In this document: one piece after another, positions 3,474-35,861 of the stretch
Layout: each line of letters starts with the position of its first letter
Position numbering within the stretch: position 1 is the stretch's first letter
Virus record (IMG/VR): IMGVR_UViG_3300047558_000137
Coordinates: 1 to 64,000 of that record
Length of the DNA: 64,000 nt
Strand: one strand, 5' to 3'
The notes under the pieces: model-generated
The model's database searches: none
Told to the model about the DNA's origin: nothing
The model's input: only the letters and a program-made list of their open reading frames with translations
Made by a program: the position numbers and the translations under genes

Positions 3474-4063
3474 TTTTTATACTGCCTCATTAAATTTTCT
3501 TTCCATGGTAACATTCTTAAGTTTGTAATTTGTGCAGCTTGCTCAATCGTCCAACCTTGTTCAAAGCATTCTTTGATTGGTACAATATGATCCAACTGCC
3601 ACCCGCCTTCTACACCGCACAAGGTCCTTGGATGCAACTCCGGATTAATGGTATCAATATTTTGGGCATAGATCTTTTGGCTTAGTCCGTGTACTTGTCG
3701 AGAATATCGGCTATATTCCTTAGACAACGGGTTTCTAATTTTCCTAGTTCCTATGCCCTTCTTTGCTACATTAGCGGTACGCTGCTGACATGAATGTGAA
3801 CAGAATTTTTTCTTAGAGGCTTGACCAACAGTAAACTCGTTTTCGCACTCTCTGCCAATACATGCTCGAGTTACTTGCCGCATTTTCTTTGGATTCGCTT
3901 TGCCGGGTTTTGCACCAACTGCTAACTGTACGTTAAGCGACTTTCTAGCTCGATACACCGTTTGCGGATGAATATTGAGAATCTTTCCAATTTCTGCTGC
4001 GGTAAGCAACGGGTTGCATATTAATTTAAGCTCTTCTGTAGTGTACACTCTTGCGGTAGCCAT
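3470..4063 (-). mobile_element. Free-standing HNH homing endonuclease-like gene between gp47 and gp46
   Basis: N-terminal HTH-like segment, C-x4-C...FCSHSC zinc-ribbon-like motif, C-terminal WQLDHIVP...NLRMLPWKEN HNH motif; splits a normally adjacent gene pair. Confidence 0.8.
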
Positions 4064-4087
4064 AGTAAACTCCTTTGGAGTATTTAC
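4061..4087 (-). promoter_or_regulatory. Late-promoter-like GTAAATA inside a hairpin that sequesters the HNH gene's Shine-Dalgarno sequence
   Basis: Minus strand reads GTAAATACTCC-AAA-GGAGTTTAC-T-ATG: 9-bp stem with a 2-nt bulge, and GGAG lies in the 3' arm. Confidence 0.7.
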
Positions 4088-4118
4088 CGATTAACAGTTA
4101 TATCTTTTATTTTAAACA

Positions 4119-15900: not shown

Positions 15901-16047
15901 ACTTTAGTGTTTGGTAATTACTTCCAAATTAACGCAGAGCCGTGGGAAATCATTACTAGTGCGGCAACTGTAAATAACATAAACGTGGTATCTGCGGTAA
16001 CGGCAGCATACTTGAATTTAGGAAATACCCTAGTAGGAACACCATGA
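12940..16047 (+). CDS. gp6: Baseplate wedge subunit (gp6-like)
   Basis: DFTSYDFETLR, NDFIESSE, ARENFIDTAQRRDSILKLARMLSYNP, FGDG, QNRMITGEDY. Confidence 0.88.
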   Translation: MAQTTRQTNLLVQQDWTKIYQTFTNADFTSYDFETLRNSMINYLKTYYPETFNDFIESSEYLALIDMIAFLGQSLAFRTDLNARENFIDTAQRRDSILKLARMLSYNPGRTTAASGLLKINSIRTTESVYDSNGVNLANTTVNWNDLTNDNWLEQFTSVFNASLISTEMIGKPGNSQKLNGIQTEEYSIALNPNTLPVASFNVNIQGNPVAFEAVSATTVGKTYIYQEDPTIQGKFNVLYRNDNNGNGSNNTGFFLYFKQGTLNVTQFNITNAIPNNYVTVATNNITNEDQWLYALDVNGNPSVAWNKVPALPGYNVVFNNMSDKDLYQVNTRNNDQVDLIFGDGSFANVPQGKFKFYYRTSNGTTYSITPDDLSAVSIAFNYISKKNTPETLTVTASLNYTVNNANAAPSLSSIKSAAPQQYYTQNRMITGEDYNIFPQTTFSSIQKIKAINRTSSGVSLYLDAIDPTGSYSTTNIFGDDGVISANSDTKSTTFSFLTTNDVYSAIYNKVIPIIDSTEVKNYYYSTYQRYDSTHANVTFSQTGNTTVSSSGYLQYNNTTQQVGTGIAGNLRYVNTGATLRFFAPSGYHFNSQHEIMPGDPFDSGDTLSFYAAVSDVVSNSDVTTPSLVTFATVVPDGAILGDITEAGLNCIIPAYKNDLSTALINTLITQIKAKVNFGLKFDQVNQIWKNILPADIGSSTDWLLKFTYTQGYYTISYKSLSYSFTTNGSTKFYFDPATRVYNSTTGLNVIDTIKLLKINTKPSSAESLGEDVLWQIYNTITYPDGYVDDSTILVRSTESQLLGVPDNPDLYTTVADSASSRGDLYFQYKHNVPARNRVDPTPVNIVDLYILTSSYSADYINWLRDLTGTVTEPEPTTTGELEIEYGSLDSYKAVSDTIVYSPARFKPLFGDKAPSNLQAVFQVVKNPNVGLTDNEIKTQVVAEINKYFDPQNWDFGETFYFSELAAYLHAQLAPNISSVVIVPADHTLVFGNYFQINAEPWEIITSAATVNNINVVSAVTAAYLNLGNTLVGTP

Positions 16048-22000: not shown

Positions 22001-25000
22001 AGACCATTTTACTGGATCATTATCTGCTTTAGGGGCCGGAGATAAGATTTGGGTAGCAAAAGACACTGACCGAGGTTGGGACGTATTCCGTGTTAACGAA
22101 ACTGGAATCCATGCTACACAAATAAGTTATTCATTGAATGACTACGCACAAGTTAAATTTGATGCAGCACACTCATTTGTTGAAGATGACGCATTTGTAT
22201 TGAAATATTTCAATGATGCATTAGATGGTATATATCGTGTGGTAAACGTTGTAAACTCTACAACAGTAACAATTACAGTAACTGGTGCTGGTCGTAGTAA
22301 AGTTATTGTGGCCCCTGTAACGGGCAATGGTTCAATCTATTCATTAGATTCTGCACGATATCAAACTACACAAGAGTTCATTGATGCTCAAATTCCTCTA
22401 CATGGATGGAATAACAATGATCATATCTGGGTTGATCAAGCAACGTTCGATGGAACAAAGCAAGGGTGGGGTGTTTATACATTTAACAGACCATGGGCCG
22501 CTAACTTAGTAACACAAATAACTGCCAATACTGTTACAGGAAACGATCGTTTTGGTACAGCAGTATGCATTAGTACTGATTCTAAGTATGTTTATGTTGG
22601 TAATCCTGGTAACAAGAGTGTTCAAGTCTTTGCTAATGTAAACGGTACATTTGTTTCTAATGTAACGGTATCAAATGTTAATGCAAACTTTGGTAGCACG
22701 GTAGATAGTCAAGGCAATGTATTGGTAATCGGCAGTGGTAGTGATGCAAACGTTCACATATATCGTCACGCTAGCGGTACAGTGACTAAACTACAAACTA
22801 TTAACTCATCGAACGTATCTGCTGTTAGCAGTGTAACAGTAAGTTCGGATCTGCATTGGTTGTATGTTGGCGATGCAAATACTAATATTGTGGAAGCCTA
22901 TTATTCAAACAATGGCGGAACAACATACACCTGGGCCAATAAAATTACTGGCACTGCAAGTAGCAAATTTGGTAATGTAATTAAAACATCGAGTGATGGT
23001 GCTTTGCTATTTGTTGCTGCACCGAACGCAACCAATGTATATGCAAGAAATGGTAATGTTTATTATTATACAAGAACAGCTAATGCATTTGCATTAACAC
23101 AAACAATATCAAGTCAAAGTCAGAATGATTCTGCGTTGTTTGGGTATAGCATAGACATTGACTCAACAGGCGGCAATCTATTCATTGGTGCACCAGGAAG
23201 CACAGCATCAGGGTATCCTACTGGCGTAGTTGAAAGACATATACTTGGCGGCCTAGGCCAGTTTTATTATGACCAAACGTTTGAGCAACCCACAAACGAC
23301 ATAGGTCGAATGGGAACAAGTGTAAGTGTAAACAACAACTCAACACTACTGGCAGTAGGAAGTCAAGGTAGTGCCACTGATGAGCATACATATTTTGATG
23401 ATTACTTAACTATTATTGATTCTGATACAACAAAGTTTGTTGATGAAATATACAATAGTGGTGTTACATACATATATGAAAATATTATTGACCCATTTAT
23501 TACCAATGATAAAGGTCGATTTGTATTTGTACAAGAATTAGAAACTCAATTATATTCCGGAGATCAATTTGGCCAAGCAGTTGATGTTACAGATGGATTA
23601 ATTACAGTGGGAGCACCGGGGTCAAGTAATAATGCAGGTGCCTCATACATATTCTCAAACCCTACACACAGTACCGCATGGACAATTACTAGAAAACAAG
23701 AACCTAAAGTTGATATTAACAGTATCAGTCGATCATTTATCTATAACAAGAAGAATGATAACATTCTAGCGGCACTTGATTATATTGATCCAGCAAAAGG
23801 AAAGATATTAGATGCAGCCGATCGAGATATCGACTTCCGTACAACCAAAGATCCTGCACTATATAACAATGGTTCCCGCGGAATCCACGCCGATTTGCAC
23901 TGGAATGCTTCGCAAGTTGGTAAGATATGGTGGAATTTGGATACAATTCGCTTCATTGATTATGAACAAGATGCGTTAATCTATAGATTGACTAACTGGG
24001 GCAAACAATTCCCAGGAAGTACAGTTGATGTATACGAATGGGTTGAAAGCACAGTATTACCGAGCCAGTACACTGGTCCAGGTATTGCAGTTTATGCTGA
24101 TGACAGTGCATACAGTACCTACGGTTACGTAGATCAAAGCGGCAATGTTAAAGTAAAATATTATTTCTGGGTTAAAGAAAAAAATACAATCAATACTCGG
24201 GCCGGAAAACGTAACAGTGTATTAAGTATCGCGGCATCAATTGATAATCCACTTAGCCAAGGTATACCTTATGCTACTGTTTTACGCAATGACAGTGTAG
24301 CATTATATAATGTTAACAATGTATTAATGGGTCAAAATTCAGTATTGCATTTAGGTACTAAAGTTAGCGATGCGAATTTGATACATTCTGAATATAGATT
24401 AGTTGATGAGGGCGTGGGAACAAAACTCCCAACAAATATCGTTAATAAATTAATCGATAGTTTATCAGGAATTGACCAGGCTGGTAATCCTGTTCCTGAT
24501 CCAGCACTACCAGTAAGCCAACGGTACGGTATTAATGTTAGACCTCGTCAAACTATGGTAATCGATACTGCCGAAGCTCTATATAGCACAATATCGTTAA
24601 TCAATTTATATTTGTCTCAATACCCAGTAGTTAAACGTAAATCTTTAACTACATTAAACAGCAGTGAAGACATTCCAGCAGAAGATTCTGGCGATTACGA
24701 TTTAGCTGTTGAGACTAAAGATGAATTAGGTTATGTGAATACAGCGGGTCTAACAGCCGGATACCGAGTTTTAGTAACAACAGATAGTTCACAGTCAACT
24801 AAATGGGCAATTTACGAATATAACGGTACAGCGTTTGATACTACACCTGTAAGAGTACAGAGTTATAAAACTAACTTGTATTGGAATTATATTGACTGGT
24901 TTGATAGTTCATATGACCCAACCTCAATTCCAGATATAACAGTTAATACTCTATTAGATTTAGGTAAACTGACCTTAGTTGCAGGGCAATATATTAAAGT

Positions 25001-27305
25001 ATTAGATGACGGTCATGGAAAGTTTGTAGTTTACTACGTAAATAGTGATTTAACGACAACTATTGTTGGCATTGAAAGCGGAACAATTTATGTTCCTGTA
25101 GAAACAGCACCGCCTCCATTAGAAACTCGTCAGATGTTACTAGCGGCATTAAATGAAATATTTGTTGATGATATTGCTGATCAATTTAACAACATATTCT
25201 TTACTATGGTACGTTATGTTCTAAGTGAGCAGAAGAACGTTGACTGGGTGTTTAAGACTAGCTTTATTAGTGCAGTTCAAAACATTCGTAAGCTAGAGGA
25301 ATTCCCGGCATATATTGCTGATAATCAGGATTTCTATTTAGACTATATCAATGAAGTTAAACCATACAGAACAGTAATCCGTGAATTTATTATTGATTAC
25401 GAGCGTAATGATAGCTTTAGTGGTGATATCACCGACTTTGATTTAGTTCCTTATTGGGATGCAAACGTACAAGTTTATCGTAGCCCAAGCGGAGAGCAAG
25501 TATACGATCGAGCATTACAACAATCTGGAGTTAACAGCCAATGGTATAAAAATTATACCTATGGGGTAGTTGATGTATTAATTGAAGATGCTGGCTCAGG
25601 GTATCTTTTTGCACCTCAGATTACAATTGTTGGAAATGGCACAGGGGCAGAAGGCTATGCTGAGATCGTTGACAATAAATTATCTAGAATTGTTATAACA
25701 AAACCTGGTACTGGGTATACAGAAATACCTAGAATTATAATTAATGGTACAGGTTCTGGTGCTCGTGCGCGGGCCGTATTAAGAAATGTGTTTAGTGGAG
25801 ATAATACAGGCCACAATGTTGTACGCAGTATCAAGACCAATATTAAATTTGACCGAGTGTCTTACCATGCAGCCAATACATTTGTAAATTGGGACACAGT
25901 ATCAAACGCACAAGTTATTGCTGCTAATACTGTTATTAATTTAAATGATACACTATTTAGATTAAATGAATTTGATTATACAGTTAACTCTAGCATAGAC
26001 TTCCCAATTGGTAATGTTACTCAAATTAGTGCGGCAGAGTTTAACTTAGCCAACGATCGTATTACCGCGTTTAACGGTAACATTGATTTATCATTGATGG
26101 TTGACGGTATAAGTTATCCTGGTGTTACTGTTGATGGTAATACTGCTATCTTGTGGACTCCAGAATTACTAGCATACCCAGATACATTAATTACATATGA
26201 AGGTAATTTATATATTACCACTGGCAATGTGTTTGATGTTGGCGGAACATTTGCAAATATTTCAGCTAATGTTAAATTAGTTGACGTTAACTCAATGACT
26301 AAAGTAGGGATCGGTACTGATAGCATCATAATGAGTCAATATACAGATACATTTGGCGTAGATCCAAGTGAGATTCTGATAGACGGCGGAAAATACGTTG
26401 ATCGATTTAGTAGTCATGCACCTGAAGAAATGGTCCCAGGTCGTATTTTTGACAGTTTAAATCTAACAGTATTCTCAAATACAAGTACTACATCAAATGA
26501 TTATGCATTTAGATTGTTTGATAATATGAATGAGAATCACAGTTTCTATAGAATTAGTGATGTAAACACAACTACGTTAAGTGCTAATCTAGCAATTACT
26601 GATACCGAAATACAAGTTACAGACGCTAGTGTATTTCCTGCACCAAACCCAACGTTGGCTATACCTGGCGTAGTATTTGTTAATAATGAAAAGATTACCT
26701 ATTATTCAATTGACACAGTGGCCAATACATTAGGCAATATTCGTCGTGCAGTAGACGGTACAGCGCCTGCTGATATGCATACTACAGGCTCGCTAGTAGT
26801 TGATGCAAGTATTCAGCAGATAGTGCCCGACACTTCTATTACTACAGCAAACGTTACATCAACTACAACCTATACTGCTACAGCAAACGTTACACTAGCA
26901 TTGCAGTTAACTGGTAATGTGACAGCTAATATCGGCGAATACATTGTTCAGAAGTTTGCAAATACTACAGTTGCAGCAAATCTTCGTGTACTTGGAAATG
27001 TAACGTCCGCCAATGTTGTTCCTGTAGTTAAGATTAGTGGAGCATTAACTACGCTAACCGGAAATACTATGACAATTCATGGCGCAGCCAGTGCAAGTAC
27101 TATTACCGCAGCAACACCTGTTGGTAGTGTATATGCAAACGGCAATGTCGTAATATCTGCAACAACGGCCAACTATAAATTGTTGAAACAAACACAGGCA
27201 TGGTATACACCAGGCGGGTCTACACCAACAGACGGCACTGGATTAATTAACAGTACTACCGATCAAGCGGTCTTCTTGTTAGCACAACCAGGGTATATGC
27301 CATGA
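16044..27305 (+). CDS. Giant virion structural protein (3753 aa) with an FG-GAP-like beta-propeller
   Basis: Follows gp6; repeated FGxxV...GAPG motifs at about 22540-23660; GSGY/GTGA/KPGTGY wedge-type repeats near 25590-25770. Confidence 0.75.
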   Translation: MSLINTTTFLPSTFRTLTNQRFLGATLDQLYTPSVDVQINGYIGRTFAPTYKLKDNYVPELDILRKHYQLEPSLVTRDENDNVSFSTGYIDLLKEIENNGGLVNNHQRLFSAETYEFDGHFDYDKFVNYYNYYWLPNGPAAVNVYANRVPNQATFTVERNKAVGGYTFAEVGTHPNLQLTLARGGTYTFNLDQAGYNFWIQSSPGVSGVDPNVSTVTTREVFGVKNNGSSTGSITFRVPLNTAQEFYTKMDTNPKIPVTAAVDFHYSDIQGKLLSEFLTNFPDGIDGLNAALHNKTLIFVSNDQDDFFWTADNTTVIREDRCNVWRITLTPEGDDQRIELITDTVVTTKQKVFIGSGKTYASNQFWVDNTYRFKLVPPITAAQSYLYYQDSSDPTFYGQIKLVDNTTSTIDVANDILGKVGYTSPNGVKFTNGLKIAFDDSVIPSYYANKEFYVEGVGTAIGLVAVSETEVLEDFGANIDSVPDYITINRSSQDRNPWSRYNRWFHRDVINASAAFHNTSADYGPNIPARRPIIEFEPNLQLFNFGKKSKQIIDYITFDATDAFNDIEGNTTADIDGVTLQTGDRVVFGNDYDTTTLNKIYVVNIETINSLHYINLVPSDDSPILPGENVLVRGGATNATKTFNFDGTAWNLCQAKTSVNQAPLFDLLDNNGYSFADTTVYPGTNFVGTKFFGYTPNTSSTTNDSILGFPLKYQNFTNVGDISFSNFYDTDTFTYSGGTVKTNTGFIAKNSNLSVTGLYNNWVKSEEQSKQYQLFTKFFDGYVIDVNGTEKAFVQIDVDVGSQTKIPYTKIYLNNKLLTYKTDYDIIDYGVYKVVVFTDMPAVGDKIDVAIFSNTASELAYYEIPLNLDFNPLNESFDTIALGQIRTHYNKLIENTAITNTNNIPTQDNYLKTRGGTLLQHNAPLVYAMAFLNNPSINFMEGLQLARREYTKFKNKFLHLCTTLSNLDYADPISGVDTILKSINAVKNSSFPWYYSDMVPQGGDFTSITYTVINARQKNYEIRSIFNLSELSNRAVLIWVNGVQQIHGIDYTFSPNTPAVIFSRTFAVDDIILIRDYFNTDGNYIPETPTKLGLYPSFTPEIYEDTTYLAPTDVIRGHDGSITPAFGDFRDQYLLELEKRIYNNIKIDYNNNSININDVVPGRFRTTEYSTEEYNYILSKSFVAWAGENSVDYTLNDTFDTNNPWTWNYKASPDILDRRALTGSWRAIYNYWFDTDTPNITPWVMLGFSSEPSWWEDRYGAAPYTSGNTLLWEDLEAGYIWNNGSPYTDKRFARLGLTGFVPVDTAGNLLPPPAVPVTAQVSTKHTGDQYSACEYGPAEVAWRRSSDYPFAIQTVLALTKPALYFSTQLDTSKFYINEQTGQFSTSDNKKISPAYISVNGDTSSVPGSTIRTSGYINWVADSIKTLGKDPVSIINSYFKNLSIQLSYKIGGFTDKNILSVFAEQTTPGSTNASVIVPDTNYDIYLNKSVAQEKLVYSAVIVERTINGYAVSGYDTTNPFFKIYPSIVNNNKHQVTIGEATTTIYNDAEKTTKLIPYGTEFATVQQVSDFLISYERYLSSLGFQFTKFDADLEVERNWTLSVRELLHWSQQAWAPGTIIILNPVSSAIDLSINGTIVDEVSNTPLGSKILDQNFLPIRNNAFSIVRTDNPIYGNTFRISAIDGSNVCFASLDTIQYEHVLIVDNISEFGDIFYVPKLGTRQFRLRLSGSKTGGWTGALSAPGYIYNDPIINTWSAGKDYRLGDLITYKNLYYTANKNIPAATTFDSTVWTQINKSSIKTGLLQSFGHNAQQFDRIYDIDKPINNEKLLQYSAGLIGFRQRSYLTDLGIDIPTQTKFYQGYIKEKGSLNSISALTSTNFNNVSGAININEEWAFRVGTYGGVNGNIFKEFVLDQSIFTTNPVAFLLTDTYNAGNIIVNLSTANVYNASNISSITTDIYSNRTIDRYMADMPSVGYVNMQDIDYTSFDIDHFTGSLSALGAGDKIWVAKDTDRGWDVFRVNETGIHATQISYSLNDYAQVKFDAAHSFVEDDAFVLKYFNDALDGIYRVVNVVNSTTVTITVTGAGRSKVIVAPVTGNGSIYSLDSARYQTTQEFIDAQIPLHGWNNNDHIWVDQATFDGTKQGWGVYTFNRPWAANLVTQITANTVTGNDRFGTAVCISTDSKYVYVGNPGNKSVQVFANVNGTFVSNVTVSNVNANFGSTVDSQGNVLVIGSGSDANVHIYRHASGTVTKLQTINSSNVSAVSSVTVSSDLHWLYVGDANTNIVEAYYSNNGGTTYTWANKITGTASSKFGNVIKTSSDGALLFVAAPNATNVYARNGNVYYYTRTANAFALTQTISSQSQNDSALFGYSIDIDSTGGNLFIGAPGSTASGYPTGVVERHILGGLGQFYYDQTFEQPTNDIGRMGTSVSVNNNSTLLAVGSQGSATDEHTYFDDYLTIIDSDTTKFVDEIYNSGVTYIYENIIDPFITNDKGRFVFVQELETQLYSGDQFGQAVDVTDGLITVGAPGSSNNAGASYIFSNPTHSTAWTITRKQEPKVDINSISRSFIYNKKNDNILAALDYIDPAKGKILDAADRDIDFRTTKDPALYNNGSRGIHADLHWNASQVGKIWWNLDTIRFIDYEQDALIYRLTNWGKQFPGSTVDVYEWVESTVLPSQYTGPGIAVYADDSAYSTYGYVDQSGNVKVKYYFWVKEKNTINTRAGKRNSVLSIAASIDNPLSQGIPYATVLRNDSVALYNVNNVLMGQNSVLHLGTKVSDANLIHSEYRLVDEGVGTKLPTNIVNKLIDSLSGIDQAGNPVPDPALPVSQRYGINVRPRQTMVIDTAEALYSTISLINLYLSQYPVVKRKSLTTLNSSEDIPAEDSGDYDLAVETKDELGYVNTAGLTAGYRVLVTTDSSQSTKWAIYEYNGTAFDTTPVRVQSYKTNLYWNYIDWFDSSYDPTSIPDITVNTLLDLGKLTLVAGQYIKVLDDGHGKFVVYYVNSDLTTTIVGIESGTIYVPVETAPPPLETRQMLLAALNEIFVDDIADQFNNIFFTMVRYVLSEQKNVDWVFKTSFISAVQNIRKLEEFPAYIADNQDFYLDYINEVKPYRTVIREFIIDYERNDSFSGDITDFDLVPYWDANVQVYRSPSGEQVYDRALQQSGVNSQWYKNYTYGVVDVLIEDAGSGYLFAPQITIVGNGTGAEGYAEIVDNKLSRIVITKPGTGYTEIPRIIINGTGSGARARAVLRNVFSGDNTGHNVVRSIKTNIKFDRVSYHAANTFVNWDTVSNAQVIAANTVINLNDTLFRLNEFDYTVNSSIDFPIGNVTQISAAEFNLANDRITAFNGNIDLSLMVDGISYPGVTVDGNTAILWTPELLAYPDTLITYEGNLYITTGNVFDVGGTFANISANVKLVDVNSMTKVGIGTDSIIMSQYTDTFGVDPSEILIDGGKYVDRFSSHAPEEMVPGRIFDSLNLTVFSNTSTTSNDYAFRLFDNMNENHSFYRISDVNTTTLSANLAITDTEIQVTDASVFPAPNPTLAIPGVVFVNNEKITYYSIDTVANTLGNIRRAVDGTAPADMHTTGSLVVDASIQQIVPDTSITTANVTSTTTYTATANVTLALQLTGNVTANIGEYIVQKFANTTVAANLRVLGNVTSANVVPVVKISGALTTLTGNTMTIHGAASASTITAATPVGSVYANGNVVISATTANYKLLKQTQAWYTPGGSTPTDGTGLINSTTDQAVFLLAQPGYMP

Positions 27306-28013: not shown

Positions 28014-29624
28014 ATGAGCTATAAAATTAATAAGACCAACGGCGATGAGTTAGTAGAGCTGTTTGACGGAACAACGAACACAGATACAGGGCTAACATTA
28101 ATTGGTCGTAATTATATTAGTTACGGTGAAATTCAAAACGAAAACTTTATACGTTTACTAGAGAATTTTGCTGATACTATACCGCCAGGGCAAAGTGTGG
28201 GCTTCACTCCTATTGCTGGACAGTTATGGTGGGACACCGGAGCACTACGTTTAAAAGTATATGATGATAATACTGGTGAATTTATTCCTGTTAGCGAACA
28301 AACCTCTTCAAGTACAGAGCCAACAATAAAACAAACTGGTGACCAGTGGTGGGATATTAGCACACAGCAATTAAAAATATACACCGGAACCGGATGGCAA
28401 TTAATTGGTCCGATATATACACAGGCACAAGGCGTTAGTGGCGAAGTAGTAAGTACAATTACCGATACACATTCTGTTAGCCATTTAGTTGTAAATCAGT
28501 ATGTAGGCGGAAACCTAGTTGCTATTGTTAGTGCAGATACAGAATTTGCACCAGACCCGATTATTTCTGGGTTTGGTAATATTAGTCCTGGTATTAACTT
28601 AAAGTCCACAGAAATACTTAACTCTACTGCTAATAATGCAGTAAGAGTTGGTGGATTATATGCTAACGTTCTAGCCAGAACTGATGTTAACACAACATTT
28701 ACTAACGATGTATTTGTTGAAGGAACATTAGTATTAACTGATGCAAACGTTTATTTTGATAACAAATCTTTAGTACTACAAAATAAAAACTCCAATGGCA
28801 ACGTTGAAGTTTACATTAATAGCACAGTCAATGGTAACGTTAAGGCGTTAATGGTAGACGGTGATACAGGGTTGACTTATGTTTATGATGATCCAATAAA
28901 CAATACTGGTGTTGCAACCAAACGTTATGTTGATGTTGTTAATAGTGCATTAACAGGAATTGTTGGAACACAAATTGCTGAAATCAATGGTAACGTTGAA
29001 CAATTAAGTCAAGACGTTTACGCTAACATTGGATATAATATTAATTGGCTAAATGCTAATTTAGACTCAGTGCATTCTTATATTGATGCAAACGTAACTG
29101 CATTATCAAATTCTACTGATTTTAGATTTGCAGATGCAACAGCAAATGCCGCTGCACAGAGCGTACAGATAGATAACTTAGTAGCCGATGTTGCACTAAA
29201 GGCATACATTCACAATCCAAGTTTTACAGGAACCGTTACAGCGCCTAATGTGGCAGCAAATAATAACAGCAACGTTGTTGCAACTACTGCATACGTTGAT
29301 GGTTCTGCTGCAACAATGAGATCGGATTATATTAGCCGTGTTACTGCCGCTGAGACTATGGCTAACGTACAGTTGGCAGCAGGACTAGCATTAAAAGCAA
29401 ACATTGCTGGACCTATATTTACTGGTGAGCCTAAAGCAGATACTCCTGCTACAGGTGACAACAGCACAAGACTTGCTACTACTGCATTTGTTAATACTGC
29501 AATAACTAACAAACAATTTAATTACACGGTTGCATCAACTGCTGCTGGTGATTTAAATGGATTAATTTCTAGTACCAACAGCGGCGCAGGAAATGACGGA
29601 GACTTTTGGTTCCAGATTGGATAA
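28014..29624 (+). CDS. Tail fibre protein
   Basis: N-terminal module (GRNYISYGE.QNENF..LLENFA, GQLWWD) shared with the 32369 and 34350 genes; ATKRYVD, ATTAYVD and ATTAFV fibre motifs. Confidence 0.75.
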   Translation: MSYKINKTNGDELVELFDGTTNTDTGLTLIGRNYISYGEIQNENFIRLLENFADTIPPGQSVGFTPIAGQLWWDTGALRLKVYDDNTGEFIPVSEQTSSSTEPTIKQTGDQWWDISTQQLKIYTGTGWQLIGPIYTQAQGVSGEVVSTITDTHSVSHLVVNQYVGGNLVAIVSADTEFAPDPIISGFGNISPGINLKSTEILNSTANNAVRVGGLYANVLARTDVNTTFTNDVFVEGTLVLTDANVYFDNKSLVLQNKNSNGNVEVYINSTVNGNVKALMVDGDTGLTYVYDDPINNTGVATKRYVDVVNSALTGIVGTQIAEINGNVEQLSQDVYANIGYNINWLNANLDSVHSYIDANVTALSNSTDFRFADATANAAAQSVQIDNLVADVALKAYIHNPSFTGTVTAPNVAANNNSNVVATTAYVDGSAATMRSDYISRVTAAETMANVQLAAGLALKANIAGPIFTGEPKADTPATGDNSTRLATTAFVNTAITNKQFNYTVASTAAGDLNGLISSTNSGAGNDGDFWFQIG

Positions 29625-29627
29625 TAC

Positions 29628-31322
29628 ATGCAATTAAATCGCGGAATTTATGTTAGACATCCTGGTACACGCGAGGAAGCATGGACTGCAATTACTGTTA
29701 CAGCAGTTGGCGGAGCCGGGGGCACCGGCGGAAATGATTCCCGAGCTGGGCACATAGGATACTCGGGTCGTATTGTATCTGGAACAATTGAGGTTCCGTT
29801 AACTACTTCATATGAAATTTTTATTGGCGGCGGCGGCGAACCTGGTGTTAGTGGCCGAGGTAGAGCCGCTGGCGGCCAAGGTGGAACTAGTTCAGCTGGA
29901 ATGCCTGGCGGCGCAGGGGGCAGCGCAGGACCATATGGATCATCAGGTGGTGGTGGCGGTGGCGGTGGTGCAACTGTTATTAAGCTAAATGGTCAGTATT
30001 GGATTGTAGCCGGCGGCGGCGCAGGTGGCGGCGGCGGCGGACAATATGGCACCGGTAAAGATACTGTAGGATTCAGGGCAAGTAATACGTTATATGGCGG
30101 CAACGGCGATTCACACGCCGGAGATGGCGGTGGCGGCGGCGGCGGTGGCGGTGGCTACGTTAGTGGCGGCCTCGGCGGATCTGTGTATGAAGATGATGGC
30201 ACCGCCTTGGGAGATGTCGGTGGATATTCAGGGTCGTGGGGCGATTCATTATACCCATATGGATTCTATGACAATGCTGATGGTACAAATGCCCCAAGCT
30301 CACGCGGATTTGTTACTGTCAATTATTCGTCGAACACCGGTGCTCCTTATTTTTCTGGCGGCATTATATCTTATGGGCCCACGCAAAATGGACAAACTCC
30401 TATAACCCATACATTTAATTCTGATGGTAAACTCATTGGTTTAGGTTCAACTAACAAAACTTCTGTGGCATGGCAACAATTGTTAAACCCATACTATAAA
30501 CAAGGGGACGATTGGAAACCTATCAGGGCAGTACATACAAAAAGAAATGGCGAATGGAAGAAAGTTTGGCCATCAAACGGCAAAGTAGAATACACTATAC
30601 CTGGCGCACACGAATTTACTGTACCGCCAGGAATATACAGTCTTACTATCGTAGCTGCCGGCGGTGGTGGCGGAGGTGGCGGTGGTGTTAGTTCGACTGC
30701 CGGCGGTGGTGGTGGGGCAGGAGAATACACTACTCAAACAGTAAGTGTTACTCCTGGTCAAAAGTTGGCAGTATTTGTTGGCGCAGGTGGCGATGGTGGC
30801 CAGGGGCTTGATGAACAGTATGGATCAGCATCTACTGGTGCCAATGGACGAGGAACTACAGTAACAGGCACTGGTGTGTCTATTAGTGTGGCAGGTGGAA
30901 CTGGTGGCACCGGCGGCGTTGCAACAGCACCACCTTCAGGCGGTGGTGGCGGATGTTGTGTTATATCTACTGCACTCGCTGATCGAGGAGTATGGTCTCA
31001 GAGAGATAAATTTGATCTTATTGCTTGGTGTGAAAAATATCTACACGGCACTTGGTGGGGCGAAACATTCAGAAGAGGATATCAAGTACTTGGATCTAAA
31101 GTTGTTATTCCTACATTATTAAAGAAGGATGGATCTTTACTGGCCAACTACGCAAACTGGGCATTTACTAATGGATGTAATCTAGTTCGCGGTAAGAAAT
31201 TTAGCCTATGGTCGCTACCAAGCAGTGTATTATGGATTGCTGCATTTATGGCGGTGGGCACAGTAGTATCTACTAAGTATGCAACTAAGTGCTGGAAAGC
31301 ATTGTATAAGGATCGAGAATAA
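29628..31322 (+). CDS. Glycine-rich tail fibre/tip protein with a C-terminal CFI-box-CTERM-like domain
   Basis: Two glycine-rich modules (FTVPPGIYSLTIVAAGGGGGG), then CCVISTA...GETFRRGY and a hydrophobic tail. Confidence 0.65.
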   Translation: MQLNRGIYVRHPGTREEAWTAITVTAVGGAGGTGGNDSRAGHIGYSGRIVSGTIEVPLTTSYEIFIGGGGEPGVSGRGRAAGGQGGTSSAGMPGGAGGSAGPYGSSGGGGGGGGATVIKLNGQYWIVAGGGAGGGGGGQYGTGKDTVGFRASNTLYGGNGDSHAGDGGGGGGGGGGYVSGGLGGSVYEDDGTALGDVGGYSGSWGDSLYPYGFYDNADGTNAPSSRGFVTVNYSSNTGAPYFSGGIISYGPTQNGQTPITHTFNSDGKLIGLGSTNKTSVAWQQLLNPYYKQGDDWKPIRAVHTKRNGEWKKVWPSNGKVEYTIPGAHEFTVPPGIYSLTIVAAGGGGGGGGGVSSTAGGGGGAGEYTTQTVSVTPGQKLAVFVGAGGDGGQGLDEQYGSASTGANGRGTTVTGTGVSISVAGGTGGTGGVATAPPSGGGGGCCVISTALADRGVWSQRDKFDLIAWCEKYLHGTWWGETFRRGYQVLGSKVVIPTLLKKDGSLLANYANWAFTNGCNLVRGKKFSLWSLPSSVLWIAAFMAVGTVVSTKYATKCWKALYKDRE

Positions 31323-31735
31323 TGGGAATTACTGTTGAAGAATATTTAAAAGATAGGCAAGCCTGTTCAGTATGTGAAGATGAAGGCAATGTAGAACACT
31401 GTGTGACTCATATGTTGAGTCGCCCAGATAACTGCATGATGTACAATTCTATTAATTACAATGGCAATCCTAAAGATGATGCAGATGTATTACTATTACA
31501 AAATTTACGTGCAACACCCGGCGGCGAGCGCAAAGTATTAGAATACTATCTAAGAGCAGAACCAATTGTTAAAAAAATTAAAGGCGTACATGGCGAGGAT
31601 CCTGTAATTTGGGCTATGTATTATCGTAAGTATGTATCAGGAATTATAGAATCATTGCGCGGCGGTAACAGCCAATTGGCAATGGATCAAGTATTTCTCA
31701 TGTTAGATGATCTAGAAACTAAGGAAACAGTATGA
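31322..31735 (+). CDS. Stand-alone CFI-box-CTERM-like protein
   Basis: LLLQNLRATPGGERKVLEYYLRAEPIVKKI resembles the LRxFRD...GxxxVxEYYxxAPxIV pattern. Confidence 0.5.
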   Translation: MGITVEEYLKDRQACSVCEDEGNVEHCVTHMLSRPDNCMMYNSINYNGNPKDDADVLLLQNLRATPGGERKVLEYYLRAEPIVKKIKGVHGEDPVIWAMYYRKYVSGIIESLRGGNSQLAMDQVFLMLDDLETKETV

Positions 31736-32316
31736 GTGACGGAGCAGGGACAGCACTTGGCGCAGGAGGCGGGCCGGGATTTGATTCTCCTAGCCCGGCC
31801 GGTGGGGGCGGGGGTGGCGCAGCACCCGCCGCGTTAAACCCTAGTACATATATTTTTGACGCAAAAACATACGGCGACCCAGTAAATATTCAGTGGATGG
31901 ATACTGGGGCAAGTGTGGTCCCAGGAATGACTGATCCTACTTTTTCTAGTTGGCTAAATGACCGCGGAATATGGATACGACGACCTGATGGAATTCCGTT
32001 AGATAGTGTTATGTTGCAATATACCGTTAATGTCCCACATAGCGGATGGTATTCTTTTATATTCGGTGCTTATGGGTGGGGTACCGTTTATATAAATGGA
32101 CGAGATTTTTACCGTGTATATAACGGTGAAGCATGGATCAGAGATGCGTACCTACAATACGGGCCTAACACAATATATTTGCAAGCTGGAAATCAAGGCT
32201 ATGTAAGTGCCCAAACTCCCTGGACCGGTGGTGCAGTGGCATGCCAAATTGGTTATCAAGCTGGCGAAGATGGTGGCCGCGGGGGCAACGGTTATGTTAG
32301 TATCCAGTGGGACTGA
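31732..32316 (+). CDS. Glycine-rich/beta-sandwich tail-associated protein
   Basis: Starts glycine-rich and ends GGRGGNGYVSIQWD, the usual terminus of phage glycine-rich fibre modules. Confidence 0.6.
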   Translation: MSDGAGTALGAGGGPGFDSPSPAGGGGGGAAPAALNPSTYIFDAKTYGDPVNIQWMDTGASVVPGMTDPTFSSWLNDRGIWIRRPDGIPLDSVMLQYTVNVPHSGWYSFIFGAYGWGTVYINGRDFYRVYNGEAWIRDAYLQYGPNTIYLQAGNQGYVSAQTPWTGGAVACQIGYQAGEDGGRGGNGYVSIQWD

Positions 32317-32368: not shown

Positions 32369-34312
32369 ATGCCATATACTATCACAAAAAGTGACGGAAC
32401 TCAACTAGCTGTTATTGCAGACGGTGCAGTTGACACCACCACCAGTTTAGAATTGCCAGGTCCTAATTATGTAGGATATGGGCAAAAACTCAATGAAAAT
32501 TTAGTATACCTCTTAGAAAATTTCTGTGCAAACACAGCACCAGCTGGTGTAAACTTGCAAGGTCAACTATGGTTTGATCAATTCAATCAAAAGTTAAACG
32601 TGTTTACGCAGCAGGGGTATGCTCCAGTTTCGGGCATTGTTAACTCTAGTACCCAGCCTTTAGTGGCACATGATGGTGATATATGGTATAATCAGGTTAC
32701 TGAACAGGCCTACATTTATGATGTGGGTGCATGGAAATTAATAGGCCCATTATATACAAAAGCAATGGGACTAAGTGGTGCTATCCCCGATACTGTTACA
32801 GCTTCGGGTACCGGACAGCCACATAATATTATTAAATTACAAAACGGTAATAGAATAGTTGCTATAGTTAGTTTTGACGCATCTTTTGTTCCAGCTACTA
32901 CAATAGATGGATTTCCAAGAATATATCCGGGCATAACATTTAACAGTGAAATTAATGCAACAATTAACTCTAACTTAACTGGTGCAGTTACTGGTAGTTT
33001 AGTTGGTACAATGACTGGGTCAATGTACGGAACATTAAGCGGAACTGTAACTGGCAATGTAACTGGTAATGTAACTGGTGATGTTACTGGAGACCTAACT
33101 GGTGATGTAACAGGAAACATCGTAGGAAGCGTTGGTACTTTAAGTACACTTCATTCAACTAATATAAATGTAACAGGTGGTTATGCAACAGGGCTGTCAG
33201 ACATTACATCTTCAACTGCATTAATCACTTCAGGTAATGTCTTAACACTAACATCTAATCTAATTATTGCAGCAAATGCCCAGATATCATTGGGTAATGT
33301 AACAGGACTAACAAATTTAACTAGTACAAACGGTAATATTACAAATTTAAGCACCGGCAACCTGACAGTTACTAGTGGCACCATTACCGGATTAACTAAC
33401 TTTTCTGCGACTACCGGGCAATTAACAAATTTTAGTACAGCCAATGCACAGATTAGTGGCGGCAACGTTACCGGCATTGGATCCTTAAGCGTAACTACAG
33501 GTGTAATTAATAATTTTAGCACTGCTAATGCACAAATTACTAATGGATCAATCACTGGTATAACCACTCTAACTGCCACAACTGGTAACGTAATAAACTT
33601 AACAACAGGTAATGCATTAATCACCGGCGGCGGAATTTACAACGTTGTTGGGGCAAATGCAACAATCACTGGGGCAAACTTAATAAACTCTGTTGCAACA
33701 ACTGCCAACGCATCTACTAGTAATACAGCCATTGCTACTACAGCATTTGTACATGCAGTAGTGCCACGTGGTGTTATTTGGATGTGGAACAGTTCTGCTG
33801 CAACTATCCCTTACGGGTTTCAACTTTGCGATGGTACCAACGGAACGCCAGATCTACGTGATAGATTTATTGTAGGTGCAGGAACAACATATACTGTAGG
33901 AAATACAGGCGGTGTAAACAGCGTAACATTAACATTAGATACTATGCCAACGCATAGTCATTATGGCAATACTTTAACAGCCTCTACTGCATCAGGTGGT
34001 GATCATACACACACTGCATCTAGCACTGTAGTTGACCCCGGTCACCGTCATAGTTACACTCCTCCGCCATCTGCACCAACGGGAGGATACACGGTCCCTG
34101 GATACCCTATAGAAGGGTATGCTGGCGCAGGCGCTGGTACAACAACAGGTGTGGCAGTAACAGGTGTAACAGTTTCGACAACTATTACAGCAAACGCAGG
34201 GCATACGCACACAACAACAATATCAGGTAACACAGCGGTACACGGCAGCGGCCAACCGCACGAAAACCGTCCGCCTTACTATGCATTGTGCTACATACAA
34301 AAAGTCATTTAA
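32369..34312 (+). CDS. Tail fibre with tail-collar domain
   Basis: PRGVIWMW...GFQLCDGTNGTPDLRDRFIVGAG collar; HENRPPYYALCYIQK terminus. Confidence 0.85.
   Translation: MPYTITKSDGTQLAVIADGAVDTTTSLELPGPNYVGYGQKLNENLVYLLENFCANTAPAGVNLQGQLWFDQFNQKLNVFTQQGYAPVSGIVNSSTQPLVAHDGDIWYNQVTEQAYIYDVGAWKLIGPLYTKAMGLSGAIPDTVTASGTGQPHNIIKLQNGNRIVAIVSFDASFVPATTIDGFPRIYPGITFNSEINATINSNLTGAVTGSLVGTMTGSMYGTLSGTVTGNVTGNVTGDVTGDLTGDVTGNIVGSVGTLSTLHSTNINVTGGYATGLSDITSSTALITSGNVLTLTSNLIIAANAQISLGNVTGLTNLTSTNGNITNLSTGNLTVTSGTITGLTNFSATTGQLTNFSTANAQISGGNVTGIGSLSVTTGVINNFSTANAQITNGSITGITTLTATTGNVINLTTGNALITGGGIYNVVGANATITGANLINSVATTANASTSNTAIATTAFVHAVVPRGVIWMWNSSAATIPYGFQLCDGTNGTPDLRDRFIVGAGTTYTVGNTGGVNSVTLTLDTMPTHSHYGNTLTASTASGGDHTHTASSTVVDPGHRHSYTPPPSAPTGGYTVPGYPIEGYAGAGAGTTTGVAVTGVTVSTTITANAGHTHTTTISGNTAVHGSGQPHENRPPYYALCYIQKVI
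32975..33640 (+). repeat. Coding tandem repeats: 12-bp TG(N/D/A/S)V units, then about 20-aa T/N/G beta-helix repeats
   Basis: gtaactggcaat gtaactggtaat gtaactggtgat...; repeated NFSTANAQI(S/T)GG-type units. Confidence 0.8.
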
Positions 34313-34349: not shown

Positions 34350-35861
34350 GTGTCGTATACAATTAATTTAACTAACGGAACTAACTTAATCCCGGGGGGA
34401 TTGTCCGAAGGTACCTACGACAATTCGCACACTAGCTTAGTATTAATTGGTAAGAATTATGCAGGATACGGCGAATTTCTAAACACAAACTTTGTTCACT
34501 TATTAGAAAATTTCGCTAGCACAAGTAGCCCTGCTAACCCATTAAAAGGACAACTTTGGTGGGATACTAGAAACAATATTCTTAAAGTTTACTCGGGACA
34601 AAGTTGGAAGATTAGTACAGGTGCTACAAGTAGCCCTGCTAACAGCCCACCGGGTGACCTAAGTACACTAGGTGGTGACTTATGGTTTGATACAACTAAC
34701 GCACAGTTAAAAGTTTATTCTGGTACACAGTGGGTTGTTGTTGGACCAGCTGCTACCGCAGCAACTGGTGATACTGGTGCATTTCCATTGTTAATGCCGG
34801 ACACACTAGGCGGTAGTCACTTGGTAATTCAATTGCGTTTTAGTGGTGTAGTGTATGCATTATTCTCAAAAGATACATTTACACAGAACGTTATTGATGG
34901 ATTTGCTACAGTTAAAGCAGGTCTAAACTTTAGTACCATTGCAAGCCCGACATGGGGTATTAGTACACAAGACGTACTTGCGACACGTGATACTCTGGTA
35001 ATAAGAGATGGCGCAGGTGGCGCCGCGGTAACAACTTTGACTGCCGGTGCAGTTAATTCAGGATCAGTTACTGCAACTACAATAACAGGTAACTTAGTTA
35101 TTCCTAGTACAGCCACATTTACTGCCAACGGTTATTCCACATATAACGGGTATGAAATTGCTACAATTGGCGGTGGCGCAACGTTCTCTAGTATTAACAA
35201 TACTGTAATTGGTAACGCCAGCCCAGCAGCCGGCCAATTTACTTCACTTGTTGTAACAGGTACAGCAGGAGTATCGCTAAGTTCTGGTGGGGTAAAACCT
35301 AGCGCAAACATCACAGGTAATGTTGGTTCATCAACTAACTATTTTAATAATACCTACTCTAATAATGTTGTTGTACTAAATGGTATTGTTCCAACTGCTA
35401 ACATGGCAGCAAATATTGGTAGCAGTACAACTTGGTTTAACACATTTTTTGGTAAATCTGTGCAGGCACAGTATGCTGACTTGGCAGAACGATTTGAAGC
35501 AGATGCTAGTTATGAGCCCGGGACTGTCGTAGAAATTGGTGGCCCAGCAGAAGTTACAGCAGTTGGACAGGATTTAAGTGAAAATGTATTTGGAGTCATA
35601 AGTACAAATGCAGCTTATCTAATGAACTCTGGCGCTGGATCAGATGAAACGCATCCCCCGATTGCAGTACAAGGCCGAGTTCCTGTTAAAGTAACAGGAA
35701 AAATCCGTAAAGGTGATCGTTTGGTAAGTGCAGGAAATGGTATTGCTAGAGCAGGTACCAAAGCAGAAATTAATACGTGGAACGTCATTGGACGGGCACT
35801 AGAAAATAAAACAACCGACGGTGTAGGTACAATTGAAGCCGTGGTTAAATTGAATTCGTAA
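34350..35861 (+). CDS. Tail fibre with C-terminal intramolecular chaperone/autoproteolytic (peptidase G2-like) domain
   Basis: YADLAERF..D..YEPGTVV, GVISTNAAYLMN, GRVPVKVTG.IRKGDRLVS. Confidence 0.8.
   Translation: MSYTINLTNGTNLIPGGLSEGTYDNSHTSLVLIGKNYAGYGEFLNTNFVHLLENFASTSSPANPLKGQLWWDTRNNILKVYSGQSWKISTGATSSPANSPPGDLSTLGGDLWFDTTNAQLKVYSGTQWVVVGPAATAATGDTGAFPLLMPDTLGGSHLVIQLRFSGVVYALFSKDTFTQNVIDGFATVKAGLNFSTIASPTWGISTQDVLATRDTLVIRDGAGGAAVTTLTAGAVNSGSVTATTITGNLVIPSTATFTANGYSTYNGYEIATIGGGATFSSINNTVIGNASPAAGQFTSLVVTGTAGVSLSSGGVKPSANITGNVGSSTNYFNNTYSNNVVVLNGIVPTANMAANIGSSTTWFNTFFGKSVQAQYADLAERFEADASYEPGTVVEIGGPAEVTAVGQDLSENVFGVISTNAAYLMNSGAGSDETHPPIAVQGRVPVKVTGKIRKGDRLVSAGNGIARAGTKAEINTWNVIGRALENKTTDGVGTIEAVVKLNS

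What the first reader, a model, noticed from the sequence alone, without database searches (positions are those of the whole stretch)
29628..32316. Glycine-rich tail module interrupted by two CFI-box-CTERM-like domains
The second glycine-rich module of 29628-31322 lacks its usual GGxGGxGxVxIxW ending. At ...PPSGGGGG it switches (30954) to CCVISTA...LIAWCEKYLHGTWWGETFRRGY plus a hydrophobic, basic tail. A stand-alone gene with the same fold pattern follows (31322-31735). Then 31732-32316 starts ...PSPAGGGGGG and ends GGRGGNGYVSIQWD, i.e. the missing end. CFI-box-CTERM-like domains are known as C-terminal domains of unknown function, mostly on exported bacterial proteins. Inference: a split fibre tip with an inserted membrane-anchoring, processing or chaperone cassette, or a swappable receptor-binding cassette. 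The domain calls are by eye.
Basis: partly seen in the sequence, partly recalled or inferred. Interest (0 to 1): 0.6.

Follow-up and report, generated by a model that had tools for sequence, protein, structure and literature searches.

The report
Split phage adhesin with unknown cassette
In a freshwater jumbo phage, a glycine-rich tail-fibre tip domain is encoded in two pieces, separated by a conserved but uncharacterised two-part cassette: a cysteine-headed helical end domain plus a small partner gene, both widespread in aquatic phages and absent from the domain libraries searched.

Summary
Gene g1 (29628-31322) holds one complete glycine-rich module and the first half of a second. At GGGGG|CC (30954) it switches to a 122-residue all-helical domain with a hydrophobic helix and a basic tail. 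g2 (31322-31735) and g3 (31732-32316) follow with overlapping stop and start codons. g3 starts glycine-rich and ends with the module's usual closing strand.

The CFI-box-CTERM call has no profile support. The end domain belongs to a large unnamed family (216 representative clusters). It is always C-terminal, it opens with an invariant Cys after a flexible linker, and it has no Pfam, NCBIfam or PDB match. g2 is a separate orphan family. In every g2 locus examined, the gene just upstream ends in this domain or a sister type.

The order half-module + domain, g2, other half recurs in at least five further loci, broken at the same profile position. Other relatives carry domain + g2 after complete modules or on unrelated virion proteins. 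The cassette is therefore a portable accessory unit, and the split is an old, maintained arrangement.

Function is inferred only. My best guess is a transient, removable assembly or anchoring handle with a dedicated partner, while g3 completes the receptor-binding module in trans.

The parts
28014..29624 (+). Tail-fibre gene directly upstream (context). Its homologue also precedes the g1 homologue in relatives.
   Evidence: PHROG tail-fibre families. Same gene order in L008/L012 and L032.
29628..31322 (+). g1, 564 aa: glycine-rich adhesin-like protein made of module 1, a linker, the first half of module 2, a Gly5 linker and the helical end domain.
   Evidence: ORF. Pfam Gly_rich_2 and PHROG minor-tail or tail-fibre families.
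29679..30326 (+). Complete glycine-rich module 1 (residues 18-233), ending GFVTVNY.
   Evidence: Aligns to Gly_rich_2 profile 12-225/226, but weakly (E 0.074, 13.5 bits, below the cut-off).
30600..30938 (+). First half of glycine-rich module 2 (residues 325-437).
   Evidence: Gly_rich_2 profile 3-111/112 of 226, E 1e-11, 44-46 bits. Same break point in L014, L018, P0003 and L032.
30939..30959 (+). Junction: Gly438-Gly442, then Cys443-Cys444. Cys444 is the invariant first residue of the domain family.
   Evidence: DNA. The junction Cys motif was found in 134 of 150 representatives; the residue before it is G/C/S/A in 119 of them, and the 12 preceding residues hold 5.1 Gly on average. The junction is the only stretch shared by the a and b domain types (hhalign probability 83%).
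30954..31319 (+). Helical C-terminal end domain (type a1), 122 aa.
   Evidence: HMMER finds 216 representative clusters at E<=1e-3, always at the C-terminus. AlphaFold2 pLDDT 90.8, six helices. No PDB match. No Pfam or NCBIfam match.
31206..31265 (+). Hydrophobic, tail-anchor-like helix of the end domain, followed by a basic tail.
   Evidence: Model helix 93-112. Maximum 19-residue Kyte-Doolittle score 1.74 in the window's protein, and the same median for type a1.
31322..31735 (+). g2, 137 aa: small helical partner protein with conserved C15, C18, C27, C38 and a YYxRxE motif. Its start overlaps the g1 stop by 1 nt.
   Evidence: 37 homologues. In all about 20 loci read it lies directly after a protein ending in an a1 or b domain. 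AlphaFold2 pLDDT 78, all-helical. No family or fold match.
31732..32316 (+). g3, 194 aa: probable second half of module 2, with an inserted beta-rich variable domain. ATGA overlap with g2.
   Evidence: ORF. Kept intact at 59% identity in L032/L033, with conserved ends and a variable middle.
31732..31824 (+). Glycine-rich N-terminal stretch of g3 (residues 1-31).
   Evidence: Sequence. The counterparts in L014, L018, L034 and L035 also start M-A/S-x-G-G....
31825..32262 (+). Variable insert of g3 (PA14-like by eye only).
   Evidence: No Pfam hit. It is collinear with the insert in the complete module of L008, but not significantly so (23% identity, E 1.5). Relatives P0012 and P0013 give weak PA14 hits for their inserts (E 0.03).
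32263..32313 (+). Closing motif GEDGGRGGNGYVSIQWD, the usual last strand of a glycine-rich module.
   Evidence: Compare the end of module 1 (GFVTVNY at profile position 225) and the ends of the g3 counterparts: GKVSVSW, GAVEIAW, GGIAFAW, GFVTVKI.

Best explanation
SHOWN
- g1, g2 and g3 form one translationally coupled unit inside the tail-fibre cluster of a 374-kb freshwater phage.
- g1 is a glycine-rich, gp38-like or Pam3 gp24-like adhesin protein. Its second module stops half-way.
- Through a Gly5 linker and an invariant Cys it continues into a compact six-helix end domain of a large, unnamed, phage-borne family. That domain has a tail-anchor-like hydrophobic helix.
- g2 belongs to a family found only directly behind proteins that end in this domain (type a1) or a sister type (b).
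- g3 carries a glycine-rich start, a variable insert and the closing strand of a module.
- The pair 'end domain + g2' is a portable accessory unit. It also follows complete modules and DUF4815 virion proteins.
- The split version is conserved in at least five further loci besides the window.

INFERRED
(a) The half-module of g1 and g3 fold together into one receptor-binding module. g3 would then be the exchangeable, fast-evolving half.
(b) The end domain is a transient handle that self-associates and/or anchors to the membrane. It would hold or nucleate the nascent virion protein, with g2 as its dedicated partner or chaperone.
(c) The handle is removed from the mature protein at the linker|Cys junction. 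In some family members, intein-like Hint domains placed directly in front of the domain would do this job.

The logic resembles C-terminal intramolecular chaperones of tailspikes and the C-terminal processing of T2 gp37 before gp38 binds. The fold and sequence are unrelated to those systems.
For: Anatomy.

Family of the end domain:
- 216 representative clusters, always C-terminal, on proteins of 122-1796 aa.
- Confident helical model with no known fold.

Portability: the domain sits on DUF4815 proteins (L003, P0017), on complete Gly-rich modules (L004, L008, L012) and on PA14/GLEYA proteins (P0063).

g2 linkage:
- Every g2 locus read has an a1 or b domain just upstream.
- Stop and start codons overlap.
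- In L022-L029, g2 is fused to a second b-like domain, a natural fusion of the two parts.

Self-association hint: in L018 and L034 both halves of the split module carry their own end domain.

Removal hint:
- Hint domains lie immediately upstream (...VHNK-GGGGGG-C...) in P0061/L005, P0102 and others.
- The -1 residue is small in 89% of cases.

Split conserved: the break falls at profile position 111-112 in the window, L014 and L018/P0003, and at about 124 in L032. g3 is intact at 59% identity while g2 is 92%. An independent sample's contig bridges both gene junctions.

Precedents: glycine-rich receptor-binding domains in Pam3 gp24 and S16 gp38 (PMC9608196). T2/T6 gp37 is cleaved at its C-terminus and then capped by glycine-rich gp38 (PMC3157838).
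Against: - No experiment and no structural prediction shows that g1 and g3, or the end domain and g2, touch.
- Homology of g3 to a module's second half rests on motifs only. Pfam, BLASTP and hhalign give nothing significant on these low-complexity sequences.
- Cleavage at Gly|Cys is untested, and an all-helical self-cleaving domain has no precedent that I know of.
- 18 of 134 members have almost no Gly in front of the Cys.
- The hydrophobic helix is not membrane-like in subfamily a2 (median 0.90), so anchoring may not be general.
- Some a1 proteins lack g2 (L040, L041).
- The domain also sits on head-module proteins (L036-L038). A role limited to fibre folding would not explain that.
Confidence: 0.4

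Rival explanations
1. g3 is not the missing half. The end domain is simply the normal C-terminus of g1, whose second module is a naturally short variant. g3 and its counterparts are independent small glycine-rich fibre proteins that happen to lie downstream.
For: No significant alignment of g3 or its counterparts to the second half of a module. Glycine-rich proteins are common in these fibre clusters. In SynMITS9220M01 and L031 the upstream module looks nearly complete, yet the next gene also starts with a Gly run.
Against: Module 2 stops at profile position 111-112 of 226, right at the linker, in several lineages. The downstream ORFs have no first half of their own before the closing strand (A7). 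The order and the overlapping stop/start codons are conserved in at least five further loci besides the window.
Confidence: 0.2
2. An effector-immunity logic, as in polymorphic toxins. The helical, partly hydrophobic end domain is a membrane-active effector carried on virion proteins and released by cleavage. g2 neutralises it in the producing cell.
For: A C-terminal add-on sits on many unrelated carrier proteins. A small gene follows it with overlapping codons. Hint domains lie in front of the domain in some members, as pre-toxin Hint domains do in polymorphic toxins (PMC3482391 appeared in the hits but was not read). Subfamily a2 sits on head-module proteins with long disordered regions. One a1 protein lies next to an endolysin.
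Against: No toxin or immunity family hit. The best structural neighbours of g2 are generic helical bundles (an 'immunity protein' at Z 5.1, within noise). The domain is conserved rather than polymorphic. g2 is missing for a2 and some a1 members. A fibre-tip adhesin is an odd carrier for an injected effector.
Confidence: 0.15
3. The end domain is a new autoprocessing and ligation module. The invariant Cys makes a thioester with the preceding Gly. That thioester is either hydrolysed or passed to an amine, such as the freed N-terminus of g3 or a Lys of another virion protein. This would rejoin the split module or cross-link the fibre.
For: The invariant Cys is the first residue after a Gly-rich linker with a small -1 residue. 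The domain stands in series with Hint domains that start the same way (S|CF..., G|CV...) in P0061/L005. All g3-type proteins start M-(A/S/G), so Met removal would expose a small N-terminus next to Gly runs.
Against: The fold is all-helical, not Hint-like. No conserved His, Asn or Thr set was found beyond the Cys. The Cys-His pair of type a1 is replaced in sub-branches (WA...LD). Most family members have no g3-like partner.
Confidence: 0.08
4. Both the end domain and g2 are divergent members of the CFI-box-CTERM family. This is the first reader's call: a C-terminal sorting or anchoring domain of exported bacterial proteins.
For: Motif-level likeness recalled from memory, not tested: Cys-hydrophobic-Ile-x-Thr-Ala at the start, then LR and YY motifs. 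One bacterial protein (Roseobacter, L039) has an N-terminal signal peptide and an a2 domain at its C-terminus.
Against: No NCBIfam hit for the domain, g2 or nine diverse family members, even at E 10. g2 is a stand-alone protein, not a C-terminal domain. The phage carrier proteins have no signal peptides. I could not confirm which accession that model has in the library.
Confidence: 0.05

Closest known systems
T2/T6-type long tail fibre tip: gp37 with a cleaved C-terminus, plus the glycine-rich adhesin gp38 (also S16 gp38, Pam3 gp24 with chaperone gp25)
   Same: A glycine-rich module sits at a fibre tip. Conserved Gly motifs alternate with variable segments. A C-terminal piece of a fibre protein is removed during assembly, and a small accessory gene lies next to the fibre gene (PMC3157838, PMC9608196).
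   Different: Here the glycine-rich module itself is divided between two genes. The C-terminal piece is an unrelated helical domain with an invariant Cys and a hydrophobic helix. g2 matches none of the tail-fibre assembly or chaperone families in the Pfam, NCBIfam or PHROG scans. Cleavage is not shown.
C-terminal intramolecular chaperone domains of tailspikes and fibres (Peptidase_S74, e.g. endosialidases, T5 pb1)
   Same: A C-terminal add-on found on many different fibre proteins. It is thought to nucleate assembly and is then cut off.
   Different: No S74 profile hit in g1. The family's conserved junction residue is a Cys. The S74 domains use a Ser-Lys catalytic pair (from memory), and no such pair was looked for here. 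The fold is all-helical with no PDB neighbour. It comes with a separate partner gene, and it also occurs on non-fibre virion proteins.
Hint / bacterial intein-like (BIL) autoprocessing domains
   Same: Starts with a Cys directly after a linker. It occurs in tandem with real Hint domains in the same proteins, so it occupies the same kind of position.
   Different: The predicted fold is helical, not the beta-rich Hint fold. There is no C-terminal His-Asn. No Hint or intein profile hit for g1.
C-terminal sorting signals (PEP-CTERM, GlyGly-CTERM, MYXO-CTERM, CFI-box-CTERM)
   Same: The order is signature motif (Gly...Cys), hydrophobic helix, basic tail, at the extreme C-terminus.
   Different: About 80 residues of folded helical domain lie between motif and helix. 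The phage proteins lack signal peptides. There is no profile hit. No cognate sortase-like gene was looked for or seen nearby.

Membership tests
NCBIfam CFI-box-CTERM | Match to the family's profile HMM | tested here: not met
   hmmscan against NCBIfam 20.0 gave no family for g1, its last 123 or 240 residues, g2, g3 or nine diverse homologues at E up to 0.1-10. I could not verify the model's accession in the library.
NCBIfam CFI-box-CTERM | Domain at the extreme C-terminus of a larger (exported) protein | tested here: inconclusive
   The end domain is always C-terminal, but the phage carriers have no signal peptide. g2 is a free-standing protein. One bacterial carrier has a signal peptide.
Pfam Gly_rich_2 (PF21722) | Profile match above the gathering score | tested here: met
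   g1 scores 44.3 bits (cut-off 24.3). Module 2 alone scores 45.6 bits but covers only profile positions 3-111 of 226.
Pfam Gly_rich_2 (PF21722) | g3 matches the second half of the profile | tested here: not met
   No hit for g3 or for the short counterparts in L014 and L018 at E up to 10. The model is a weak detector here: complete module 1 scores only 13.5 bits, and L022's complete module is not detected at all.
Hint / intein superfamily | Hint profile match and beta-rich Hint fold with a C-terminal His-Asn | tested here: not met
   No Hint, intein or Vint hit in g1. The AlphaFold2 model is six helices. Real Hint hits occur only upstream of the domain in P0061.
Peptidase_S74 intramolecular chaperone | Profile match | tested here: not met
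   No PF13884 hit in g1. S74 is found on neighbouring fibre genes of relatives, so the library can detect it.
Tail-anchored membrane protein | A single strongly hydrophobic helix within about 40 residues of the C-terminus, with no N-terminal signal | tested here: inconclusive
   Type a1 median Kyte-Doolittle score is 1.74 over 19 residues (window 1.74), near the usual threshold. Type a2 is 0.90. The AlphaFold2 model gives a confident helix but says nothing about membranes.
Polymorphic toxin / immunity pair | C-terminal domain with toxic activity, neutralised by the product of the next gene | not testable with these tools
   Only the architecture is similar. No toxin or immunity profile hit.

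The most novel reading that the evidence does not exclude
The Cys-headed helical end domain is a new kind of self-processing module, unrelated in fold to Hint domains. It converts the Gly-Cys bond into a thioester. It thereby either releases the virion protein or ligates it, for instance to the N-terminus of g3, rejoining a receptor-binding domain that is encoded in two pieces. g2 would assist.
Probability: 0.08. Interest if true: 0.85.

Novelty: new variant of a known kind. Interest (0 to 1): 0.5.

Why it matters
If the inference holds, three things follow.

First, phages can build a receptor-binding glycine-rich tip from two polypeptides: a conserved half and a rapidly changing half. That would be a simple route to host-range change, and a possible design principle for engineered fibres.

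Second, the end domain is a large phage-borne family: 216 representative clusters at 50% identity. It sits on fibres, DUF4815 structural proteins and head-module proteins, mainly in aquatic samples. It has no name, no profile and no solved relative. Its invariant linker-Cys junction points to chemistry or recognition that has not been described.

Third, defining this family and the g2 family would improve annotation of many 'hypothetical' ends of virion proteins.

Tried and rejected
- Complex prediction of the end domain with g2 (result): no answer (score 0.00, below the mark). This counts neither for nor against binding.
- Profile-profile comparisons. g2 against the end domain and against type b gave probability below 1%. 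The g3-type halves against whole modules gave no alignment. Type a against type b matched only over the 25-column junction.
- BLASTP of g3 against a complete module with an insert (L008), the L018 counterpart and module 1: nothing significant.
- Cultured-phage searches. blastn of the region and tblastn of the end domain, g3 and an a2 domain found nothing. g2 and the b domain hit only Synechococcus phage SynMITS9220M01.
- Fold searches of both models (PDB Foldseek, VIA wide, ESM Atlas, BFVD) gave only unnamed viral proteins and noise-level helical bundles. The IpaH/NEL E3-ligase rows at Z 3.2-3.9 are within noise.
- Search for an uninterrupted version. g3 has only one homologue cluster and none in viral contigs. 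Contigs of four freshwater runs showed no clean joint that skips the cassette. The listed joints lie in Gly-codon repeats with short sides, or come from a diverged relative.
- Flanking direct repeats: only generic GGN repeats. Promoter and terminator scans were at chance level.
- Papers: no paper holds 'CFI-box' or the motif string.
- No alternative genetic code was needed or used.
Full report
WHERE WE ARE. The window is the first 64 kb of a 374,314-bp virus record rated complete. Its DNA is held by freshwater metagenome runs from several studies. The finding lies in a run of same-strand structural genes:
- a 3753-aa protein (16044-27305);
- fibre genes at 28014, 32369 and 34350 that share an N-terminal domain;
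- g1, g2 and g3 between the first and second of those fibre genes.

CHECK OF THE OBSERVATION.
- g1 (29628-31322, 564 aa) has a complete glycine-rich module. Residues 18-233 align to Pfam Gly_rich_2 positions 12-225 of 226, though weakly.
- A linker follows, and then a second module. That module scores well (45.6 bits) but covers only positions 3-111.
- After P435-P436-S437 and five Gly codons come Cys443 and Cys444 at nt 30954, followed by a 122-residue domain.
- g2 starts on the last base of the g1 stop codon. g3 starts with an ATGA overlap on g2.
- g3 begins with a 31-residue glycine-rich stretch, has a roughly 145-residue insert, and ends GEDGGRGGNGYVSIQWD. That is the motif that closes module 1 and the modules of relatives.

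THE END DOMAIN IS A REAL, LARGE, UNNAMED FAMILY.
- An exhaustive HMMER search with the last 123 residues found 216 representative clusters at E<=1e-3, 47 of them at E<=1e-10.
- Among the 150 best representatives, almost every match lies at the extreme C-terminus. The 134 that show the junction motif are 122-1796 aa long.
- Carrier proteins include Gly-rich proteins, DUF4815 structural proteins, PA14/GLEYA proteins and long low-complexity proteins.
- Subfamily a1 (CC-V-I/V-A/S-T-A-L..., including the window) has a strongly hydrophobic penultimate helix (median Kyte-Doolittle 1.74). Subfamily a2 (C-V-I-A-T-H-A-V...) does not (0.90).
- The junction Cys motif was found in 134 of 150 representatives. 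The residue before it is G, C, S or A in 119 of these. The 12 preceding residues hold 5.1 Gly on average, although 18 members use other low-complexity linkers.
- In several a2 proteins one or two intein-like Hint domains end directly in front of it (...VHNK-GGGGGG-C...).
- No Pfam or NCBIfam model matches the domain, in the window or in nine diverse members.
- AlphaFold2 on a 46-sequence alignment gives a confident six-helix model (pLDDT 90.8, pTM 0.83).
- Foldseek on the PDB finds nothing (best E 0.7). The exhaustive aligner tops out at Z 3.9.
- The only good structural neighbours are unnamed viral proteins (ESM Atlas TM 0.63; BFVD TM 0.67 and 0.63, plus a DUF4815 protein at 0.50).
- Language-model look-alikes are likewise unnamed, mostly viral clusters.
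- Only 4 of 185,579 species genomes hold an a2 domain. Three of those loci look like phage head modules. The fourth is a Roseobacter protein with a signal peptide.

g2 IS A SECOND ORPHAN FAMILY TIED TO THE DOMAIN.
- g2 has 37 homologues of about 136 aa, with conserved C15, C18, C27, C38, Y41 and Y75-Y76-x-R-x-E.
- In every g2 locus I read (about 20 distinct ones), the gene immediately upstream ends in an a1 domain or in a sister domain, type b: Gly run, C-K/S-I-I-C-T/Q-K-L-x-E-L-G-Y..., then a hydrophobic tail.
- Types a and b share significantly only the 25-column junction (hhalign probability 83%).
- In L022-L029, g2 is fused to an extra b-like domain. This natural fusion argues that g2 and such domains work together.
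- The converse does not hold. a2 proteins, and some a1 proteins (L040, L041), lack g2.
- g2 folds as a helical protein (pLDDT 78) with no meaningful structural neighbour (best Z 5.5).
MAFFT does line up the conserved Cys and the LR...YY motifs by eye.

THE SPLIT IS CONSERVED; THE CASSETTE IS PORTABLE.
- Split arrangement (half-module + end domain, then g2, then a gene that starts glycine-rich and soon reaches a closing strand):
  - the window;
  - L032/L033;
  - L035, where g3 continues into further domains;
  - L014, where g3 is only 93 aa and ends GKVSVSW;
  - L018 and L034, where g3 is the second half plus a second end domain of its own.
- The break is at Gly_rich_2 position 111-112 in the window, L014 and L018/P0003, and at about 124 in L032.
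- The g3-type halves align well with each other (A7).
- Unsplit arrangement: L008-L013 and L004 have a complete module, then a linker, the end domain and g2, with no g3. L003 has the domain and g2 on a 1677-aa DUF4815 protein.
- Between the window and L032, g2 is 92% identical, g1 is 69% and g3 is 59%. In g3 the ends are conserved and the middle diverges. So g3 is a maintained, fast-evolving gene, and the cassette is the conserved part.
- In SynMITS9220M01 and L031 (type b) the next gene also starts with a Gly run. There the upstream module looks nearly complete, so I do not count these as clear splits.

WHAT I COULD NOT SHOW.
- That g3 is homologous to the second half of a module rests on motifs and gene order. 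Pfam, BLASTP and hhalign are powerless on these sequences.
- No cassette-free form was found in databases or in reads, and there are no flanking repeats.

MOST LIKELY MECHANISM (inferred).
- Glycine-rich modules are receptor-binding tips in Pam3 gp24 and S16/T2-type gp38 (PMC9608196, PMC3157838). g1 follows a fibre gene, as gp38 follows gp37.
- I propose that the g1 half-module and g3 co-fold into one module, so that specificity can change by changing g3 alone.
- The end domain is common to fibres, DUF4815 proteins and head-module proteins. It is joined by a floppy linker through an invariant Cys. It is sometimes preceded by self-cleaving Hint domains. It is sometimes present on both partners (L018, L034; g2 fusions).
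- These features fit best with a transient, self-associating and possibly membrane-anchored handle that is removed from the mature protein, with g2 as its partner.
- Rivals are: an independent g3 (0.2), an effector-immunity pair (0.15), a new thioester-based processing or ligation domain (0.08), and true CFI-box-CTERM membership (0.05).

COMPARISON AND NOVELTY.
- In logic this is closest to C-terminal intramolecular chaperones and to T2 gp37 processing plus the gp38 adhesin. By sequence and predicted fold it belongs to neither, nor to Hint domains or the known C-terminal sorting signals (see the membership table).
- I rate it a new variant of a known kind: a fibre accessory module, here combined with a split adhesin.
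- Interest is moderate (0.5). The anatomy is solid and unusual, and both families are uncharacterised, but function is inferred only.

- No other genetic code was used.

Noticed in passing
window 16044-27305 (+): A single 3753-aa ORF directly upstream of the fibre cluster, presumably a giant structural or fibre protein. It was not analysed.
   Followed up: no
window 28014-29624, 32369-34312, 34350-35861 (+): Three fibre genes share a similar N-terminal stretch of about 75-130 residues (MSY.I..TNG...GYGE..NEN...LLENFA...GQLWWD; phrog_14394 hits for the first two, the third by eye from the translation). They have different C-terminal parts. This looks like one attachment domain carrying several alternative tips.
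   Followed up: partly
L005 3912-7466 (protein P0061): A DUF4815 structural protein carries a poly-Pro linker, two tandem mini Hint (intein-like) domains and then an a2 end domain. The next gene is the usual DPLAQ(S/T)F structural partner.
   Followed up: partly
L001 4103-5995 (Synechococcus phage SynMITS9220M01 gp028) and L031 2112-3995: A run of about 35 prolines, directly followed by a run of arginines, links the glycine-rich part to the b-type end domain.
   Followed up: no
L022-L029, about 4001-4840: g2 is fused in frame to a second b-like end domain (TNGR-VIC-TWL...). This is a natural fusion of the two cassette parts.
   Followed up: partly
L039 1297-3309 (Roseobacter sp. HKCCA0434 contig): A bacterial 670-aa protein has an N-terminal signal-peptide-like start and a C-terminal a2 domain after a long Gly run. 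It lies near a lipoprotein-like ORF and a secretion-ATPase-like ORF. It is the only cellular-looking context found.
   Followed up: partly
L008/L009/L012/L013, downstream of g2 on the opposite strand: Large phage contigs carry a conserved convergent block with an Fe-S biosynthesis protein (PF01521), Fe superoxide dismutase, an eIF-1a-like protein, a radical SAM protein and WYL_2. L040 also has NifU_N and PF01521 genes.
   Followed up: no
window 29938-30161 and 30650-30720: Logan contigs of four freshwater runs break at the Gly-codon (GGN) repeats. Depth there is inflated by unrelated organisms, so assemblies of such genes are fragile. The GC bump at 30001-32000 (0.47 against roughly 0.35-0.45 across the rest of the window) reflects the Gly codons.
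   Followed up: partly
L040 2501-7253: A 1250-aa protein ending in an a1-type domain is followed not by g2 but by a secreted SH3_3 + Hydrolase_2 cell-wall hydrolase. The domain thus lies next to a lysis gene.
   Followed up: no
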